Part shown: in pieces, positions 36,862 to 45,955 of the stretch | Layout of the letters: the number at the start of each line of letters is the position of its first letter | How positions within the stretch are numbered: position 1 is the stretch's first letter | Source of the DNA: Blastocladiella emersonii ATCC 22665 | Taxonomy: Eukaryota; Fungi; Blastocladiomycota | Length of the DNA: 64,000 nucleotides | NCBI GenBank assembly: GCA_025594325.1 | Contig: JANHCV010000001.1 | Coordinates: 620,001-684,000 of the forward strand | Direction of reading: 5' to 3' | Notes under the pieces: model-generated | Databases searched by the model: none | Seen by the model: the letters and a program-made list of their open reading frames with translations, nothing else | Told to the model about the DNA's origin: nothing | Program-made: the position numbers and the translations under genes

Positions 36862-39800
36862 TTAGGCGATGCCAATGATCTTCTTGAGCTTGATGACGAG
36901 CGCCCAGTCCTCGCGGGACATGTCGGCCTTGAAGTTCTCCTTGAGCACGTCGATGGACTCGCGCGAGATCTTGGAGTAGAGCGTCTCCTTCTCGAGGAAG
37001 TGGCGGCCGACCATCTTGGGCGTCTCGTAGGGGGCGCACTCGATCTTGATGGCGACGCCGGCGCCGGACTGGCCCTTCTTGACAATCTCCATGGACTTGT
37101 GGTTCATCTCGATCGAGGTCACCTTGCCGATGGTGACCATCTGGCGCTCGGCGGTCGCGGGCGCGCCGGCGACGGGCGGCATGTAGACGGTGATGGGCGT
37201 GCCGACGCGGAGCGACCCTTCGACGACGTCGACGCCGAGGATGATGGGGTCGCGCTTGTTGAAGACGTGGATGATGCGGAGCGCGCACGGGAACACGGCG
37301 ACGGGGGCGGCGTCCTTCTTCTTCTGCTCGAGGAGCGCGTTGTGGTACGCCGTGAACTTGTCGAACAGGTGGTAGATGATGTCGGCCTTGAAGATCTGCA
37401 CGCCGACATCGTCGGCGTACTCCTGGGCCTCCTTCTCGACCTTGACGTCAAAGCACAGCATCACCGCGTACTCCTTGGCCGACTCGAGCATGACCGAGGC
37501 CTTGACCACGTCCTTGCGGTGGACGGGGCCAATGTTGATGCCGGACACGGGGATCTTCATGTCCTTGAGGAACGACAGCAGCGCCTCGAGCGAGCCCAGC
37601 GTCGACGCCTGCACCCACACGCCCTTGCCGGACTTGTCGACCGACGACAGCAGGTTGGCGAGGTCGGCCTGGACCTCGCGCATGAGCTCCTCCTCGTCGT
37701 CGTCGGGCTGGACGACGAGCAGGCGGGAACCCGCGACGGCCTTCTCGAGCCCGTTGGCCGAGATCTTGACGCCCATGGCGGCCTTGATCGACTTGTGGTG
37801 CACGTAGTTGGCCTTGACGCGGAGCTCGCGCAGCGGCTGCGGCGTGAGCAGGGCGCGCACGTTGGTGACAATGGGCCCGTCGAGCCCGCACACGACGATG
37901 CGGTCGTTCTCGTGTAGCACGCCGTTGGACAGGATCACGTCGATGGTGGTGCCCAGACCCTCGATGACCTTGACCTCGAGCACCGTGGCCTCGAGCTCGC
38001 CGACGTACATGAGCTTCTCGGACATGCGCGACTGCGTGAGGTGGACGAGCAGGTAGAGCAGGTCCGGGATGCCCTCGCCCGTGATGGCCGAGGTCGGCAC
38101 CAGCGACACGTACTTGGCCATGTTGCGGTTCTTGGTGTAGAGCTCGGCGTTGAGCGACTGCTCGGCGAGGGCGAGCTTGGTGCGCTGGAGCCGGTCCTCG
38201 AACTCCTTGACGACGCTGGGCTTCTGGCGCGCGAGCGACGCCTCGAACCCGCCGTTGGGCGTCGCGTCCCACCCGTAGATGCGGTCCATCTTGTTGAGCG
38301 CGACAATGAAGGGGGTCTTGCGCTGGCGCAGCAGGTTGAGCGACTCGATGGTCTGCGGCTCGAGCCCGTGCATGATGTCGATGACGAGGATCGCGATGTT
38401 GCACAGCGACGACCCGCGGGACCGCAGGTTCGTGAACGACTCGTGTCCGGGGGTGTCGATGACGAGCAGACCGGGCACCTTGATCTCGAGGTCCTCCTTG
38501 TTGAGCACCTCGACCTTCTTCTCGATGGCGTCGACGGGGAAGTAGGTGGCACCGATCTGCTGCGTGATCCCACCGGCCTCGCCCTCCTGCACGTTGGTCT
38601 GGCGGATCTTGTCGAGCAGCTTGGTCTTGCCCGTGTCGACGTGCCCGAGAATGCAGCAGATGGGCGAGCGCAGGTTGTCCTTGGACCGCGCGGCGAGGGC
38701 CGCCGAACGGCGCGCGTTGCGGCGCGCAGCGGCCTCGCGCCGGCGCGCCTCCTCGGCCTCGCGGCGCATCTTCTCCTGCGGCGTCTCCTCGTCCTCGGAG
38801 TCGTCCGAGTCCGAGTCGTCCCAGTCGGAGCCCGAGTCGGAGCCCGAGTCGGACGCCGAGTCCGAATCCGACTAGACACGATGCGCGCACGGGTTCGCGG
38901 GTGTTAGTCGCCGTTGTTGCGTGCGGATGCACGCGCCGAGCGCGAAGAGTCGATGCGTACCTCGGCAGCAGCAGCAGCCTTACCCTTGCCCTTGGTGGCA
39001 GCGGCGGCGGCGGGGGCAGCAGCCGACTTCTTGCCGGCAGCGGCAGCGGACTTGGCGGCGGGCTTCTCCTCCTCCTCGTCCTCGTCCTCGTCGCTGGACG
39101 ACGCGTCCCACGACTCCTTGACGTCCTCGGCGTCGTCCTCGTCCGACGACGCGTCCCAGGCGTCCTTGACGTCCTCGTCCTCCTCGTCCGAGTCGGCGGC
39201 GGCCGCGGCGGGGGACGCGAGGGCGGCTTCGGCGGCGATGAGCTTGGCGGCCTTCTTGGCGTCGGCGGCGGCCTTGGCGGCAGCGGCGGCCTTCTCCTCG
39301 GCGGCCTTGGCGTCGGCGGCGGCCTTGGCCTCCTTCTCGAGCTGCTTCTGGAGCTTGTAGTCGCCGGTCGCGGGGGCAGCCGCGGCAGCAGCGTCGGCGG
39401 CGGGCTCGGGCGACGCGGCCTTGTTGTTGTTGTTCTTGCGCTTGCGGTTCTCGTAGACGACGCGCTTCTTCTTGGGCGCCTCGCCCTCACCGTCTGCGCC
39501 GCCGTTCTGGGCGAGGGCGGGGACGACGACGCCGGCGTCGAGGAGCTGCTGGAGCTTGAGCGCGGCGCGCTGCTGGGCCTCCTTCTGGGCCTTGGTGAGG
39601 AGCTTGCCCTCCTTGCGGAGCTGCTCGCGCTTGGCCTTCTCCTTCTCCTTCTTGGCGCGCTTGGCCTCCTCGCGGGCCTTCTCCTCGGCCTCGGCGCGCA
39701 ACCGCTCCTCCTCCTCGCGCTTGCGCTCCTCCTCGGCGAGGCGCGCGGCCTCCTCCTCGGCGGCGCGCTGCGCGGCGAGCATCTTCTGCAGGGCGGCGAT

Positions 39801-40586
39801 GGGCGCACCGGGCTTGGCCTTCTTCTTGCCACCACCGGCAGCCGCCTTCTTGGCCTCGGCGTCGCGCTCCTTGGTCGCCTCGGCCTCGAGCAGCCGCTTG
39901 GCCTCGTCCTGCTTCTGCTTCTCGAGCTCCTTTTGCCGCTGCTTGCGCAGCTTCTCCTTTTCCTTCTTGGACAGCGGCTTCTTGTCGATGTCATCGACGT
40001 CGTCCTCGGCGGGGGTCGGGGACGCGGCGGCAGCGGGCTCCTTCTTGCCCGCGTTCTTGCCCTTCTTGCCGCCCTTGGCCTTGCGGTTGTCCTCGGGCCA
40101 CTCGTCCTCGGCGGCCGCGGGCGCGGGGGCCGCCTCGACGGCAGCAGCCTCGGCCTCGATCTCGGCGACAGCATCAGCGGGCAGGGCGGGGGCGGGGGCG
40201 GGGGCGGGCGCGGGCGACTGCTTTCCGCCCTTCTTGCCCTTCTTGCCCTTGGCGGCCTTGCGGTCATCCTCGGGCCACTCGTCCTCGGCGGACGCGGTCA
40301 CGGGCGCGGCCGGCGCTGGTGGCTCCTCGTCGGCCTCGTCGGCGGGCAGGGCGGGCGCGGGGGACTGCTTGCCGCCCTTCTTGCCCTTCTTGCCGCCCTT
40401 GGCCTTGCGGTCGTCCTCGGGCCACTCGTCCTCGGCCGAGGCCGTGACGGGGCCGGCGGGGGCCGTGGGCTCGGCCGGATCGGCCTCAGCAGCGGCGGCA
40501 GCGGGCGCGGCGGCGATCTCGTCGCCCTTGACGTCGTAGTCGTCCCACAACTGGTTCTTCTTTCCCTTCTTGCCCTTGGGCGGCAT
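36862..40586 (-). CDS. FUN12: Translation initiation factor eIF5B; intron 38872-38960
   Basis: [71 protein letters not shown] and SRESID..K; charged N-terminus starting MPPKGKK. Confidence 0.97.
40040..40440 (-). repeat. Three copies of an [22 protein letters not shown] motif in the eIF5B N-terminus
   Basis: Three near-identical DNA and protein units separated by Pro/Ala spacers. Confidence 0.9.
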
Positions 40587-40843
40587 GGCGGATGGTGGGC
40601 GGGTGTGTGCGGGGCGGGTGCCGTTGTGGATCGATCGACTCAACGAGAGAGAGAAGGAAACGACAGCGAGCCGCGGCAGCCGACACGGCAACGCCGCCCG
40701 TGTTTGGCGAGTGTGCGTCACGTGGCTCGTCGCGCGCGCGGCGCATCGCGTCCCTCTCTTCGCCCTCCCCTTCGTTGCGTCGCAAAAATACTCGGTCTGT
40801 ATGGATAATGGTGGTTGGGGATATGTACACGCTCTCTCTCTTT

Positions 40844-43534
40844 CTACTCGACGCCGATCTCGGCGCCCGAATCCGCGCGCTCGATCGACGCCCTCGCTTT
40901 CCGTCCCGGCGACCCGCCGGACTCGCCGCCGCCGCGTGCGAGCGGCGACGACCGCGTCGGCGGGCGCCCGCGCGGTGCGGGTGCCGGTGGTGCGAGCGCT
41001 TCGCGCGCGAGGAGCGATGTGCGCATCACCACGCTGCCGCCGGCGATGCCCGAGAAAAGGCCTGCGGGCGCGGGGGTGAAGTCGGACGAGGAGGAGGGGG
41101 TCGAGGGAGCGAGGCCGGCGCGGGAGAGGTCCGTTGGTGGTCTTGGTTCGGGCGAGGAGAGGGGTTCTTCTGGCACCGCGGCAGCCGCGGCCCACCGCTG
41201 CTTGCGCGACCGGTGCGCGAGCGTCGCGTCGATGGACCGCGACAGCGACCGGCGCGACTCGGAGTGTGCTGCGTCGCCCGCCGCCCGCGACCTCGAGCGC
41301 GAACCCCTCCGCTCCGCCGCCGCGAGCCGCGCGTTCCCCGTCCCGCGGAGCGCGAGGACCTCGCCCATATACCCCTTGGCGCCCGCGAGGTGCGGCGACG
41401 CGAGGAGGCGCCAGTGGAGCAGCGACATGTTGGCGGGCATCGAGTGTTCCGGGTACGGGCCGAGGTCCTGCTTGATGGGCGGGAGCGGGTCATGCGGCGC
41501 GGCGCCGGGGCTTGCGCGCTGCTTCATGGCGTCGACCGCGAGGAGCATGTTGCGGACCATGCTGAACCGGCGCGTCGCGACGTTCGCGATCCCCGAATCC
41601 GTCGACTCGGAGTTGGTCCGCGACCCGCGGCGCGACGCGCGCGCGGCGGCGGCCGCGGCGAGGGCGCCCATGCCCTGTACGTCTCCCTCGTCTTCCTCGT
41701 ACCCGCCACCCGCGGATGTCGGGGAGGTGGGCGGCGACGCCACGAGGCTCGCGAGCACGCTCGGGTCGTTCCCGTCGACGGCCGCGAGGACACGGGCCCC
41801 CGCCTCGTCTGCGCCGGCCGACGACGCGGATGCGGCCGACGACGCGACACTCGATGGGGCGACGGGCACCGCGCGCGCCGAGAGCGCCGACAGGAACGAG
41901 AGCGACAGACCGTCGTCGTCGCTCGCCCCGTACAGCCCCGCGGGCGTGCCGCGCGGTGGACGGGCCGCTGCAGTGGTCGCGGCGGGCGAGACGGCGGCCT
42001 TGGCCTTGAGCTTCCACCGCGACCACGGCGACACTTTCTCCCCGGCGGCCGCGTGCATGGCGGCGCGCTCGGCGAGGCGCGCGCGGAGGTTGCCCGTGAT
42101 GGGCCACGCGACGGGGGAGGTGGGCGACCGCGCGTACGCGGACGTCAGGACCGTCTGCGACGGCGGCGTCAAGTGGCGGCGGTGTTCGGCGCCGAGCATG
42201 CGGAGGCCGAGGTTCGCCGATGACGGTTCCTCGTCGTCGTCGCTGGCGAGATCCTCGACCTCGCCTTCCGCGGCGACGTCGGACCCGAACAGACCCGCGG
42301 CAGCCGCGGCAGCGCGGTCGGCGAGCGCCGAGTCGTCCGTCTGGACGCCGGCGTCGCACGTGTCGAAGGTGAAGGGCGCGTGGAACGCGTCGTCGGGGGT
42401 CGCGCCGAGCCGCTCGAGTTCCGAGACGAACGAAAGGTCCTCCCCGCCGGGCCCCGTCCCCGCGTCGCTGCGGGTACTCGACCGCTCCTCCTCGAGGAAC
42501 TGGAGCTCCTCGCGCGCCGCGCGCAGGAGGGCGTCGTACTCGTCGAGGTCGCGGGCGAGCTCGTCGATGCGGCGGCGGTGCTCGAACTCGCGGGCCTCGG
42601 CCTCGCGAATTTTCGCCTTGAGGATCTCGTTCTCGAGCGCGAGCTGCTGCTCGGCCTCGTGCTCGCGGCGCATGACGGCTTCCATGGCGGACCGCTCGTG
42701 CGTCACGTACGACCGCTGTTTCGCGAGCTCCGACTTCAGCGCCGCGTTCTCGTCGCCCATGACCTCGAGCTCGGCCTCGGCTTTCGCGGCGCGCGCTGCC
42801 AGGCCCGCGAGGTCGCGTTCCGCGCGGCGGAGCTGTGCGGCATCGGCCTCGAGGTCCGCCGCGTGCGAGGTGGCCGAGGCGAGTTGGGCGTGCAGCGCCT
42901 CGCACTCGGCGTGCCAGTGCCGCACCTCGTCGGCCTGCCGCCGCGTCTCCCGGCGGAGGTCCTCGATCAGCACGTCCTGCTCGCCCATCTGCGACGAGCT
43001 CGCGCGCGCCGTCAGGTCGAGCTGGCGCTCCAGCAGGTTGCGTGCTGACTCGCTGTCGTTGAGCTACACGCATGCGGGGTCGTTAGACCATGGCCGACAG
43101 TAGACTTCCCCGCGAATGATCAGTACCCGCTGCTCGAGCAAATGCTCTCTCTCCGCGGCCGCGAGCCACTTTCCCTCGGCGACCTCCTTTTCCTGGAGCA
43201 GCTCGTACCCGAGCTGGGCGACGATCAGGAGGTCCTCGACGGTCGGCGGCGTCGGGCCCACACTGCCATCGCTCGACGACTCGCTCGCCGACGACGACGT
43301 GTCGAGGATCCCCGCGCGCGTCAGCACCGAGTGCAGGATGTTGAGGGTGCGGTTGCGCGCAAGCGCCATGGCCGACGGCGACATGGGCCGGCGCGGCGGC
43401 GCGGAAAAGTCGGCGCCCGAGGACGAGTAGACGGCGGGGACTCGAGAAGAGGAGGAGAAGCCGTGGTCGTCGTCGTCGATCGTGAGCCGCGGCGAGGTCG
43501 AGCCGTAGTCGGCGTCGGGGTCGGTGGATGCCAT
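40844..43534 (-). CDS. Long coiled-coil protein with CC1-box-like and Spindly-like motifs (candidate motor adaptor); intron 43064-43126
   Basis: EDLLIVAQLGYELLQEKE, then ~240 aa of mostly heptad-rich sequence, then GEDLSFVSELERLG, then a disordered Ser/Ala tail. Joins ORFs 43064..43831 and 40844..42988 via a GTACTG...TAG intron. Confidence 0.75.
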
Positions 43535-44182
43535 GGAACGGGCGGGCAGGGACCGGGGTGTTGTTGTTGCTGTAGTTGTGCGACCGCGAGGGGTATCGTG
43601 TGGGGGTGCGAGTGCAGCAAGTCGCCGGCCGCGAAAGTTACGTTGCAGAGCGAGGTGGGGGATGAGTTGCGATGGAGGGGAGGAGAAGGGATGCAAGGAC
43701 GGCAAACTCAAGTGGCGGCGGCGCACAGGCGGCGGCGGCGGGCGCTCCCACACCGTCTCCAACTCGACGGTCCGAAACGCTGTGGCGACCACGACTTGGG
43801 GTCTCGCTGGTTTCGCGCTTCGACTGGTCACAGCCAGTGGCGAGGAGGGCGATACTTCGTGGTGGGGGCGATGGTGCGAGGGCGACGATGGTGAGCCTTG
43901 GGCGGATCAGGCGCCTCGTCGGCTCCGCCCAGCGTTGCGAACGATACCTTCACCACGACACCACGAGGTGTTGGTGCCCGGCCGACTTGCCGCGGACGCA
44001 AAGGCGTGAGACACGGAGGAGACATTCGGCCAACGCGGTCACGCCCTTGCAGCGTGACGCGGGGGCGGCGGGGCGCCGACCTGATCGCCGCGTCGTCGCT
44101 GTGCTTCCGCGCCCCCTCCCTCCTCTCCTCTCTCCCCCACACCGCGACCTGTCGTGCCACCCACCACCCCCTGCAACGTATC

Positions 44183-44918
44183 ATGTCCGAGCTCCTGTCC
44201 AACCCGCGCGGCATCCCGCAGGCCCCCTTTGTCGAGAAGGTCGAGGCGTACATCTCGGGCTCGGTCGAGGCCACCATGGCCAAGCTCGACGAGATGACCA
44301 AGTATGCCGTTCCCTCTTGCGTTATCGCCCCCCTGATTTGCTGCTCACACGCTGGTCGGTGTGCAGGAAGTACAAGTTCATGGAGCAGAACCTCCGCCAG
44401 CGCCACGCGTCGCTGTCGTCCAAGATCCCCGAGATCCGCACTACCCTGCAGACGGTCCGCATGCTGATTGCCCAGAACGTTCGTATTGCTCTCTTTCACA
44501 CCCTCGACCAAGACTGACCACCCGCCACGCTGCACAGGAGTCGGGCGAGCCCCTCGAGACCAACTTCGAGCTCAACGACACGCTGTTTGCCAAGGCCGTG
44601 GTCGAGGCCACGCCGACGGTGAACATCTGGCTCGGCGCCAACGTGATGCTCGAGTACCCGATCGCCGAAGCCGAGGAGCTGCTCGCCACCAAGCTCGCCC
44701 AAGCAACAACCTCGCTGCAGCAGGTCGACGAGGACCTCGAGTTTCTCCGCGAGCAGATCACCACCATGGAGGTCAGTACGTATCGTTTTTCCCTTTCTTC
44801 TTTGGTGGAGTCTCTCGTCGCGTCCACTAACCAGTCGCGCACCCGGATAGACGTCGCGCGCGTCTACAACTGGGACGTGCAGCAGCGAAAGAAGGCGCCC
44901 AAGCCTGTCGCCGCCTGA
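44183..44918 (+). CDS. PAC10: Prefoldin subunit 3 (VBP1/Pac10/Gim2); 3 introns
   Basis: NPRGIPQAPFVEKVEAY, KYKFMEQNL, SKIPEIRTTL, TNFELNDTLFAKA, VNIWLGANVMLEYPIAEAEELL, LEFLREQITTMEV, ARVYNWDV. Confidence 0.95.
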
Positions 44919-44977
44919 TCGCCTTTTCACGCCCAGACACCTGTATCTCACACAGTACATGTATTTCACATCTCACC

Positions 44978-45955
44978 TCACCTTTCGCCACCTGCCCGCG
45001 TCAACGCCTCGCTCGAGTCCTCGACATCCTCCTCGTCCTCTTCGACCACATCCGCGATCGTGATCGCTCGTCGTGCCACCACCACCGCACGGCGCACCGG
45101 CGGCGCCGCCGCTTTTTTCGCCGGCTGCGCGACGGGCGCTGCCGCATGCCGCGTGCTCCCCGGGATCAGGATCCGCACCGCCGCCGCCGGCGCCACCGCG
45201 TTCTGGCGCACCCCCGACCGCGTCGCGGGGCCCGTCGGCGACGGCAGCTGCAGCACGACCGACGGCAGCTGGGCGCGCGCGCGCGGGGTCGAGGTGTCAT
45301 CGTCGCTATCGCTGTCGCTCTCCCGCCCTGCCGATGTGCGCCGCGGCGAGACGGCAGCGGTACCGCTTGGCCGGTGGTGTGTTGCGAACGGGAGCGCGGA
45401 CCGGCCGGGGCTCCTTGGCGACGGCGAAGAGGGGGTTGGGGAGGGGGAGGTCGGCGACGTTGGCGCCTTGGTGTACTGCTGGTACTGCAGGATCGACACC
45501 CACGTGCCCTGCACCGCGGTGCGCAGGAAGCCGGGGACGGCGGCGGCGGGGGTGCCGGGGTCGGTCGGCGAGTCGATGGTTGGTGAGGCGGCGGAACTTG
45601 GTGTGGGTGTAGCGCACGCGCTGCTGCCGCCGCGCAGCGAGCTCGACAGGAACGCAGACGCCGGCACGCGTTTCGCGTTGAGGTCGAGCGACGGGCGCTT
45701 GAGCGGGGTGGCGGACGTCGGCGACGCCGCTGACGGGGATGGAGACCGCGACGGTGACGGCGAGTCGTAGCCGAACAGCGACCATCTACGCTGCAGGTCG
45801 CCGCCAAGGCCGCCCGGGTCGCTCGGCAAATGCACGCCGTGCGGGTGCTGCGCGAGCTCGGCGAGCCGGCGCTTGTGCGTGTAGTAGACGCGCAGCGCGA
45901 CGAGCGCCACCGCGCACCCGACGGCCAGGATGATGGGGAGCGGTTGCACCGACAT
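44978..45955 (-). CDS. Hypothetical protein with N-terminal TM anchor and S/P-rich disordered tail
   Basis: MSVQPLPIILAVGCAVALVALRVYYTHKRR followed by low-complexity sequence; single exon; fills the gap between PAC10 and the SET gene. Confidence 0.6.
   Translation of the reverse strand: MSVQPLPIILAVGCAVALVALRVYYTHKRRLAELAQHPHGVHLPSDPGGLGGDLQRRWSLFGYDSPSPSRSPSPSAASPTSATPLKRPSLDLNAKRVPASAFLSSSLRGGSSACATPTPSSAASPTIDSPTDPGTPAAAVPGFLRTAVQGTWVSILQYQQYTKAPTSPTSPSPTPSSPSPRSPGRSALPFATHHRPSGTAAVSPRRTSAGRESDSDSDDDTSTPRARAQLPSVVLQLPSPTGPATRSGVRQNAVAPAAAVRILIPGSTRHAAAPVAQPAKKAAAPPVRRAVVVARRAITIADVVEEDEEDVEDSSEALTRAGGER

What the first reader, a model, noticed from the sequence alone, without database searches (positions are those of the whole stretch)
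40844..43534. Candidate BICD/Spindly/TRAK-type dynein activating adaptor in a fungus
Seen: DLLIVAQLGYELL (~43195-43230) at the start of a long coiled coil, and S-F-V-S-E-L (~42416-42434) about 240 codons downstream after removing the intron. Established: animal activating adaptors (BICD2, BICDR1, Spindly, TRAK, HAP1) carry a CC1 box (DLxxAAxxGxxLL) that binds dynein light intermediate chain and a Spindly motif (S-L-F/A-A/S-E) roughly 230-300 aa later that binds the dynactin pointed end. The well-studied fungal adaptors are Hook and Num1 types. Inference: a CC1-box adaptor system in zoosporic fungi, with the long disordered tail as cargo or membrane linker. Both motifs deviate from consensus (VAxxG; SFVSE).
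Basis: partly seen in the sequence, partly recalled or inferred. Interest (0 to 1): 0.72.

Follow-up and report, generated by a model that had tools for sequence, protein, structure and literature searches.

The report
Candidate blastoclad CC1-box dynein adaptor
This two-exon gene of the water mould-like fungus Blastocladiella emersonii encodes an unnamed coiled-coil protein, found only in its phylum, whose conserved motifs and geometry match those of animal adaptors that switch on the dynein motor, but binding has not been tested.

Summary
The gene lies on the minus strand (exons 43534-43127 and 43063-40844). It encodes 875 aa, identical to hypothetical protein H9P43_000233 of Blastocladiella emersonii. 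DLLIVAQLGYELLQEKE opens a single predicted helix of 232 residues (about 34 nm, heptad-periodic). FVSEL lies in the loop 17 residues after the helix ends, 243 residues from the VA pair.

An HMM search of 1.84 billion protein representatives found relatives only in Blastocladiomycota (Allomyces, Sorochytrium). All keep both motifs, spaced 238-259 residues apart. The Sorochytrium orthologue has the canonical AAxxG box (LAAELGFSLL), and its FLSEL opens a short helix after the coiled-coil break.

Language-model neighbours of two orthologues are mostly CC1-box adaptor families (CDR2L, TRAK/HAP1_N, BICDL), scoring below 0.9, so this is a lead only. Pfam and PDB profile searches give no match to HAP1_N, BicD or any solved adaptor. 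There is no canonical Qxx[HY] site, the first box alanine is Val here, and the Spindly-type motif starts with Phe.

Zoosporic fungi already have true Spindly orthologues with CC1 boxes, so the adaptor class is not new there. This gene is a separate, unannotated family.

Best reading (about 0.5): a lineage-restricted CC1-box-type dynein-dynactin adaptor. Other first-reader notes of this scan list further CC1-box candidates in this genome, on other DNA.

The parts
40844..43534 (-). Whole gene: 875-aa protein, identical to hypothetical protein H9P43_000233 of Blastocladiella emersonii ATCC 22665
43127..43534 (-). Exon 1 (residues 1-136): disordered leader, short conserved helix, CC1-box-like motif, start of the long helix
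43064..43126 (-). Intron of 63 nt, GT..AG, with a CTAAC branch-like site and an in-frame TAG if retained
   Evidence: orthologues align across the junction
40844..43063 (-). Exon 2 (residues 137-875 plus stop codon)
43316..43378 (-). Short N-terminal helix (residues 53-73, TLNxLHxxLxRxGxL). It is conserved in Allomyces and not seen in Sorochytrium. It may be a shielding helix, which is inference only.
43184..43234 (-). CC1-box-like motif DLLIVAQLGYELLQEKE (V105, A106, G109). L102, A106, L108, G109, L112, L113, K116 and E117 are invariant in three genera.
42482..43240 (-). Single predicted helix, residues 99-330 (232 aa, about 34 nm), heptad-periodic; spans the intron
42479..42637 (-). [quoted passage not shown] This is the position where known adaptors touch dynactin pointed-end sites 2 and 3 (inference).
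   Evidence: bioRxiv 10.64898/2026.04.25.720804
42410..42442 (-). Spindly-type motif EDLSFVSELER (FVSEL = residues 348-352) in the loop after the helix
41873..41908 (-). Tail island LSLSFLSALSAR, conserved in Allomyces
41522..41569 (-). Tail island RFSMVRNMLLAVDAMK (predicted helix 629-651), conserved in Allomyces
41366..41485 (-). Tail island LPPI..PYP....PAN..LLHW.LLAS.H..G, conserved in all three genera; candidate cargo-binding site (inference)
41219..41254 (-). Tail island RRSLSRSIDATL, a basophilic-kinase-like RRxS site by inference; conserved in Allomyces and partly in Sorochytrium

Best explanation
The gene encodes a Blastocladiomycota-restricted coiled-coil protein that most likely works as a CC1-box-type activating adaptor for cytoplasmic dynein-1 and dynactin.

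Proposed mechanism (inferred, not shown):
- The protein dimerises through the 232-residue helix.
- The N-terminal box (V/A-A-x-x-G-x-x-L-L) binds the C-terminal helix of the dynein light intermediate chain.
- The roughly 34-nm coiled coil lies along the dynactin filament between dynein tails.
- The highly conserved end of the coiled coil, together with the F-[VL]-S-E-[LM] motif after the break, contacts the dynactin pointed end (p25/p62).
- The roughly 520-residue, mostly disordered tail, with its conserved islands (especially PYP..PAN..LLHW..LAS.H..G), binds an unknown cargo and is probably regulated by phosphorylation.

Shown here: gene model, motif positions, helix extent, conservation, spacing and taxonomic range. 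Inferred: every binding step.
For: 1. Both motifs and their spacing (243, 238, 238 and 259 residues) are conserved in three genera that are only about 30-48% identical.
2. The Sorochytrium orthologue carries the canonical box L-A-A-E-L-G-F-S-L-L. The same core is seen in published Spindly orthologues, e.g. Spizellomyces I-A-A-E-L-G-S-S-L-L and Saccoglossus K-A-A-E-L-G-K-Q-L-L.
3. The first box position varies naturally in true Spindlys: Ser in Allomyces, Batrachochytrium, Capsaspora and Monosiga; Ile in Brugia. The second Ala and the Gly are invariant in this family.
4. The box opens a 232-242-residue helix. A break follows, and then the second motif sits in the loop (B. emersonii) or at the start of a short helix (Sorochytrium H278-291). 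Published CC1 lengths are 35-39 nm with the Spindly motif after the break (PMC9481740).
5. The box, the end of the helix and the second motif are the conservation peaks of the N-terminal half.
6. Language-model nearest named clusters for two orthologues are mostly CC1-box adaptor families (CDR2L, HAP1_N/TRAK, BICDL2/BICDR), plus NUDE and, at rank 20 for one, CCDC85. Scores are 0.83-0.90, so this is a lead only.
7. The motif pair is rare in shuffles.
Against: - No profile-level similarity to HAP1_N, BicD or any solved adaptor chain.
- In B. emersonii and Allomyces the first box alanine is Val. Ala-to-Val at both alanines abolishes light-intermediate-chain binding in human Spindly and BICD2 (PMC5379953).
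- The second motif starts with Phe, whereas published consensus has Leu or Ile, and true Spindlys show L/M/V.
- No Qxx[HY] heavy-chain site about 33 residues after the box. Only a conserved Gln (Q150, at +44) followed by an acidic cluster 14-21 residues later.
- On a whole-proteome scale the bare motif pair could arise by chance a few times.
- First readers flagged several other 'CC1 boxes' in this genome, so the motif may be over-called.
- No expression, localisation or binding data; no RNA run was listed.
Confidence: 0.5

Rival explanations
1. It is a lineage-specific structural coiled-coil protein (for example a component of the centrosome, kinetosome or zoospore cytoskeleton) that does not bind dynein. 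On this reading the two short motifs resemble adaptor motifs by chance, or because small-residue and leucine patterns recur in coiled coils, and they are conserved for another reason.
For: - No homology to any adaptor family.
- Deviations at key positions: Val for Ala, Phe for Leu, and no Qxx[HY].
- Whole-protein shuffles give the pair at 1e-3 to 5e-3, so a few chance cases per proteome are expected.
- Structure searches return only generic long helices.
- Language-model scores are below the 0.9 level at which hits stop being leads.
Against: - Chance does not explain why the motifs are the conservation peaks.
- Chance does not explain why they sit exactly at the start of the helix and just past its end.
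- Chance does not explain why the spacing is held at 238-259 residues despite indels around the second motif.
- Chance does not explain why one orthologue has the canonical AAxxG.
Confidence: 0.3
2. It is a true evolutionary member of an animal CC1-box family that has diverged beyond detection. By architecture the most likely candidate is TRAK/Milton-HAP1 (leader, box, about 230-aa coiled coil, long disordered tail), or else BICDL/BICDR or CDR2. It would then share that family's cargo logic, for example Miro/Gem1 on mitochondria.
For: - Nearest named language-model clusters are these families for both orthologues tested.
- The architecture resembles TRAK as described in bioRxiv 10.64898/2026.04.25.720804, including a possible shielding helix upstream of the box.
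Against: - Pfam HAP1_N and BicD give nothing at E<=10 on whole proteins or fragments.
- The HMM search of 1.84 billion representatives found no protein outside Blastocladiomycota.
- No Milton, BICDL_C or CDR2_C tail domain, and no Qxx[HY] site, which TRAK1 and BICDR1 have.
- The upstream helix is absent in Sorochytrium.
Confidence: 0.15
3. It is the Spindly orthologue, or a recent Spindly paralogue, of Blastocladiella, recruiting dynein to kinetochores through the Rod-Zwilch-ZW10 complex.
For: The second motif aligns in register with the Spindly box: S-F-V-S-E-L-E-R against S-L-F-A-E-V-E-D. The box resembles those of fungal and holozoan Spindlys.
Against: - Allomyces and Catenaria have distinct published Spindly orthologues with T-L-L-[ST]-E-V boxes and CxxQ tails, and Allomyces also has this family.
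- This protein ends AEIGVE, with no Cys at -4.
- A first-reader note places a Spindly with a CxxQ tail elsewhere in this genome (s1-260098; not verified here).
Confidence: 0.05

Closest known systems
TRAK1/2-Milton and HAP1 (Pfam HAP1_N, PF04849)
   Same: - An N-terminal leader precedes the CC1 box, with a possible helix upstream of it.
- A coiled coil of about 230 residues ends in a Spindly-type motif.
- The C-terminal half is very long, mostly disordered, and carries the cargo contacts.
- These families are among the nearest language-model neighbours.
   Different: - No HAP1_N or Milton profile match.
- No QxxH heavy-chain site.
- The long helix is predicted as continuous, whereas TRAK1 has a very short CC1a followed by a break.
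- The first box residue is Val in two genera.
- The taxonomic range is Blastocladiomycota only.
BICDL1/BICDR1 and BICD2
   Same: - The AAxxG-type box sits at the start of an uninterrupted CC1 of about 35 nm.
- The second motif resembles BICD2 L-L-S-E-L (residues 336-340; bioRxiv 10.64898/2026.04.25.720804), against F-V-S-E-L or F-L-S-E-L here.
- Spacing is 243-259 residues, against 293 in BICD2.
   Different: - No BicD or BICDL profile match.
- No Q150/H153-type site at +33 from the box.
- No second or third coiled coil for Rab binding; the tail is disordered instead.
Spindly orthologues of zoosporic fungi (Allomyces, Catenaria, Batrachochytrium, Spizellomyces; van Hooff et al. 2017, Dataset EV1)
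   Same: - The extended box is of the same type (D-L-x-hydrophobic-[ASV]-A-x-hydrophobic-G-x-x-L-L) in Allomyces, Batrachochytrium and Spizellomyces; Catenaria's is more degenerate.
- A Ser/Thr-hydrophobic-hydrophobic-x-E-hydrophobic motif lies roughly 230-300 residues later.
- They occur in the same organisms.
   Different: - They are separate genes.
- Spindlys have a conserved region after the box and a CxxQ prenylation tail; this family has neither.
- This family has its own tail islands.
CDR2/CDR2L (Centrocortin)
   Same: - They were recognised as adaptors from an N-terminal CC1 box in a first coiled coil (PMC11580933).
- CDR2L is the top named language-model neighbour.
   Different: - CDR2 proteins are about 450 aa, have an HBS1 site and a C-terminal kinectin-binding helix.
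- No sequence match here.

Membership tests
CC1-box class of dynein-dynactin activating adaptors (functional class) | Strict AAxxG box in the first coiled coil (PMC5379953; PMC9481740) | tested here: not met
   The window gene has V105-A106-Q-L-G109 and Allomyces has V-A-Y-L-G. The orthologous position in Sorochytrium is A20-A21-E-L-G24, which meets the motif. The second Ala and the Gly are invariant in the family.
CC1-box class of dynein-dynactin activating adaptors (functional class) | Heavy-chain binding site 1: Qxx[HY] about 30-33 residues after the box, plus an acidic patch 15-20 residues later | tested here: not met
   There is no conserved Qxx[HY]. A conserved L..D......LE.Q block sits at +31 to +44, and an acidic cluster at +58 to +65 (E164-D171). 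The 2026 preprint reports that many adaptors, and possibly fungal dyneins, do not use the canonical motif, so this lowers membership more than it lowers function.
CC1-box class of dynein-dynactin activating adaptors (functional class) | Largely uninterrupted CC1 of about 35-39 nm between the box and a break (PMC9481740) | tested here: met
   Helix 99-330 (232 aa, about 34 nm) in B. emersonii and helix 12-253 (242 aa, about 36 nm) in Sorochytrium. Heptad z is 2.9-5.2. Dimer formation was not tested.
CC1-box class of dynein-dynactin activating adaptors (functional class) | Spindly motif L-hydrophobic-x-E-hydrophobic (updated: [LI]-x-x-E-small hydrophobic) after the CC1 break | tested here: inconclusive
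   The motif is F-V-S-E-L, F-V-S-E-M or F-L-S-E-L. Positions 2-5 fit, and so does the location (loop, or start of a short helix, after the break). Position 1 is Phe in all members.
CC1-box class of dynein-dynactin activating adaptors (functional class) | Binds the light intermediate chain helix and the dynactin pointed end, and activates processive motility | not testable with these tools
   No multimer prediction or experiment is available here.
HAP1_N / TRAK-Milton (PF04849) and BicD (PF09730) | Significant match to the family profile | tested here: not met
   No hit at E<=10 for whole proteins or for fragments of three orthologues. No adaptor chain was found in PDB profile searches.
Spindly (SPDL1) orthologous group | Single orthologue per genome, with a Spindly box and a C-terminal Cys at -4 (CxxQ) in fungal members | tested here: not met
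   Separate Spindly orthologues are published for Allomyces and Catenaria. This protein ends AEIGVE and its orthologues end AVYHPD and MIGGND.

The most novel reading that the evidence does not exclude
Blastocladiomycota evolved, or alone retained, a dynein-dynactin activating adaptor family of their own, with no detectable kin. It uses a natural Val-Ala variant of the CC1 box and a Phe-initiated Spindly motif, implying co-adapted light intermediate chain and p25 surfaces. Through the conserved PYP..PAN..LLHW tail motif it would tether a phylum-specific cargo, such as the zoospore nuclear cap, side-body complex or single mitochondrion, to the microtubule cone.
Probability: 0.15. Interest if true: 0.65.

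Novelty: new member of a known kind. Interest (0 to 1): 0.48.

Why it matters
Work on fungal dynein adaptors has centred on Hook, and on Num1 for cortical anchoring. The CC1-box class is defined almost entirely from animals.

- A second, non-Spindly CC1-box-type protein confined to one early-diverging fungal phylum would show that this adaptor design is older or more easily evolved than the animal families suggest.
- It would supply natural variants at positions where mutations disable the human proteins: Val at the first box alanine, and Phe at the first Spindly-motif position.
- It would give a handle on microtubule-based organelle positioning in zoospores.

If binding fails, it is a caution that the two short motifs plus spacing are not enough to call an adaptor.

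Tried and rejected
- **Pfam:** scans of exon translations, whole proteins and fragments gave only noise-level coiled-coil hits.
- **PDB sequence and profile searches:** four queries gave no adaptor. The best hit was a ZMYND8 coiled coil at E 0.05.
- **Word-index protein searches (3 of 3):** only Allomyces was found.
- **Full HMM search of 1.84 billion representatives:** it added only Sorochytrium. No chytrid or other orthologue exists to survey.
- **Foldseek against PDB and a shape search of the ESM Atlas, using the Sorochytrium N-terminal model:** no PDB hits, and only generic long-helix clusters (RUFY3, CARD10, HOOK3, ODAD1) at TM below 0.5. This is uninformative for a single helix.
- **RNA evidence:** no run was listed.
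- **Synteny:** none between B. emersonii and Sorochytrium.
- **Net charge of the coiled coil:** -20 and -23 in two genera but -3 in Sorochytrium, so not diagnostic.
- **Spindly orthology:** considered and rejected.
- **NudE-like reading:** considered because a NUDE cluster was among the language-model neighbours. Rejected for lack of any NUDE_C match.
- **Position-weight matrix from published Spindly boxes:** not built, because that would have meant typing many sequence pieces. The comparison with them is by eye.
- **Exon joining:** the two exons were searched separately by reference. The full-length protein was used only as the database record P0001, which a search returned.
Full report
**Gene and organism.** The window is about 70% G+C, so long mechanical ORFs occur in every frame. 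The real gene is on the minus strand.
- Exon 1 is 43534-43127 (136 codons).
- The intron is 63 nt, GT..AG, at 43126-43064, and carries an in-frame TAG.
- Exon 2 is 43063-40844 (739 codons plus stop).
- Searching exon 2 alone returned an identical 875-aa database protein, hypothetical protein H9P43_000233 of Blastocladiella emersonii ATCC 22665 (P0001). The published model therefore equals mine.
- Allomyces orthologues align through the exon junction without a gap.
- Full-length work used the database record P0001.

**The observation.** DLLIVAQLGYELLQEKE is residues 101-117 (43184-43234). EDLSFVSELER is residues 344-354 (42410-42442). V105 to F348 is 243 residues.
- AlphaFold2 with the shallow family alignment predicts three features: a short helix at 53-73; one continuous helix at 99-330 (pLDDT mostly 78-95); and a mostly disordered tail with weaker helices at 629-651 and 699-763.
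- The first motif therefore opens the long helix, and the second lies 17 residues past its end.
- Heptad periodicity of the long helix exceeds shuffles in three orthologues (z 3.8, 5.2 and 2.9). This fits a coiled coil of about 34 nm.

**Relatives.** Three word-index searches found only Allomyces javanicus and A. macrogynus proteins.
- A profile HMM search of 1.84 billion cluster representatives found only Blastocladiomycota. It added one protein, RI367_000038 of Sorochytrium milnesiophthora (P0005, E 8e-32).
- No chytrid, Mucoromycota or animal protein reached E 1e-3.
- All members keep both motifs:

| Genus | Box | Second motif | Spacing (residues) |
|---|---|---|---|
| Blastocladiella | V-A-Q-L-G | F-V-S-E-L | 243 |
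| Allomyces | V-A-Y-L-G | F-V-S-E-M | 238 |
| Sorochytrium | A-A-E-L-G (within R-L-R-L-A-A-E-L-G-F-S-L-L-R-D-K-E) | F-L-S-E-L | 259 |

- In a three-genus alignment only 21% of columns are identical overall. The box has 7 of 13 identical. The end of the long helix (residues 283-331) has up to 8 of 13. The pattern E-D...F-[VL]-S-E-[LM]-x-R survives indels around it.
- A model of the Sorochytrium N-terminus gives a helix at 12-253 (242 aa, about 36 nm), a break, and a short helix at 278-291 that begins at H-F-L-S-E-L.

**Comparison with what defines adaptors.** Published definitions list four features:
- a CC1 box (AAxxG) that binds the light intermediate chain;
- a heavy-chain site, Qxx[HY], about 30-33 residues downstream, with an acidic patch 15-20 residues later;
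- a CC1 of 35-39 nm;
- a Spindly motif, L-hydrophobic-x-E-hydrophobic (updated to [LI]-x-x-E-hydrophobic), in the loop after CC1 or at the start of CC2.

Sources are PMC5379953, PMC9481740, bioRxiv 10.1101/2022.03.17.482250 and bioRxiv 10.64898/2026.04.25.720804.

Geometry and motif placement fit. Three points deviate:
- The first box residue is Val in Blastocladiella and Allomyces.
- The first Spindly-motif residue is Phe throughout the family.
- No Qxx[HY] is conserved. There is only a conserved Gln (Q150, at +44) followed by an acidic cluster at E164-D171.

Ala-to-Val at both box alanines abolishes light-intermediate-chain binding in human Spindly and BICD2. A24V alone, at the second alanine, compromises human Spindly's recruitment of dynactin to kinetochores. 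In this family the second Ala is invariant.

The Spindly orthologue set of van Hooff et al. 2017 (Dataset EV1) shows that the first position is naturally variable. It is Ser in Allomyces, Batrachochytrium, Capsaspora and Monosiga, and Ile in Brugia. The extended box (D-L-x-hydrophobic-x-A-x-hydrophobic-G-x-x-L-L) matches this family closely. For example, Capsaspora D-L-I-L-S-A-Q-L-G-Q-A-L-L shares 8 of 13 positions with D-L-L-I-V-A-Q-L-G-Y-E-L-L.

The 2026 preprint also reports that most adaptors do not use the canonical Qxx[HY] contact. It adds that the dynein residues involved are not conserved in Aspergillus.

**Family membership.** Pfam gives nothing for HAP1_N, BicD or any adaptor family at E<=10. 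PDB sequence and profile searches find no adaptor chain.
- The gene is not Spindly. Allomyces and Catenaria have separate published Spindly orthologues with T-L-L-[ST]-E-V boxes and CxxQ tails. This family has no Cys at -4 and no membrane segment.
- That dataset also shows that CC1-box proteins in zoosporic fungi are not new as such.

**Other evidence.** Language-model neighbour searches with the N-terminal halves of two orthologues (about 30% identical to each other) returned mostly the same named clusters: CDR2L, HAP1_N/TRAK, BICDL2/BICDR, and NUDE. One query also returned CCDC85 at rank 20.
- Scores were 0.83-0.90. Below 0.9 these are leads only, and no negative control could be run. The enrichment for CC1-box adaptors is nevertheless notable.
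- Shuffling gives the motif pair with 225-300 spacing in 1e-4 to 5e-4 of core shuffles and 1e-3 to 5e-3 of whole-protein shuffles. A few chance cases per proteome are therefore possible, and the weight rests on conservation and placement.
- Shape searches were uninformative.
- No RNA run was listed.
- There is no synteny with Sorochytrium.

**Verdict.** The best reading is a lineage-restricted protein built like a CC1-box dynein-dynactin activating adaptor, with the cargo end in the disordered tail (confidence about 0.5).
- The tail island L-P-P-I..P-Y-P....P-A-N..L-L-H-W.L-L-A-S.H..G is conserved in all three genera and is the best candidate for cargo binding.
- The main rival is a non-dynein coiled-coil scaffold (about 0.3).
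- Hidden membership of TRAK/HAP1 or BICDL is possible but unsupported by profiles (about 0.15).
- The Spindly reading is effectively excluded.
- This scan's first readers also noted other CC1-box candidates and a CxxQ-tailed Spindly elsewhere in this genome. I could not check those.

Noticed in passing
window 44361-44918 (+): The divergently oriented neighbour encodes a prefoldin subunit (Pfam Prefoldin, E 8e-19). The shared upstream region with the adaptor-like gene is only about 0.6-0.8 kb.
   Followed up: partly
window 38904-40553 (-): The tandem downstream gene starts about 300 bp after this gene's stop codon with [10 protein letters not shown] and a Lys/Glu/Ala-rich low-complexity region. 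A first-reader note calls it the eIF5B N-terminal extension. This part has no Pfam hit.
   Followed up: partly
P0004 (AMAG_09690) and P0003 (AMAG_07806), Allomyces macrogynus: Both public gene models look flawed. P0004 carries an unrelated 19-residue stretch exactly where B. emersonii has its intron, which suggests a retained or mis-spliced intron at a conserved position, and it ends early. P0003 loses the RFSMVR island in a way that looks like a frame error.
   Followed up: no
L001 5449-6000 (Sorochytrium contig JAVQLU010000001.1): The open frame continues upstream of the annotated start of RI367_000038 and includes an ATG roughly 95 codons earlier, so the annotated N-terminus may be too short. 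The TLNxLH helix seen in Blastocladiella and Allomyces is not present there.
   Followed up: partly
window 39500-45000, all frames: At about 70% G+C, ORFs of 500-900 codons occur in several frames over the same DNA. ORF length alone is no evidence of a gene in this genome.
   Followed up: no
ESM Atlas, rank-1 neighbour of P0001 residues 50-370: An unnamed cluster of about 354-aa Mucoromycota proteins (62 members) scored 0.90 with 168 shared features. It might be a comparable short CC1-box-like protein in Mucoromycota. It could not be fetched or tested.
   Followed up: no
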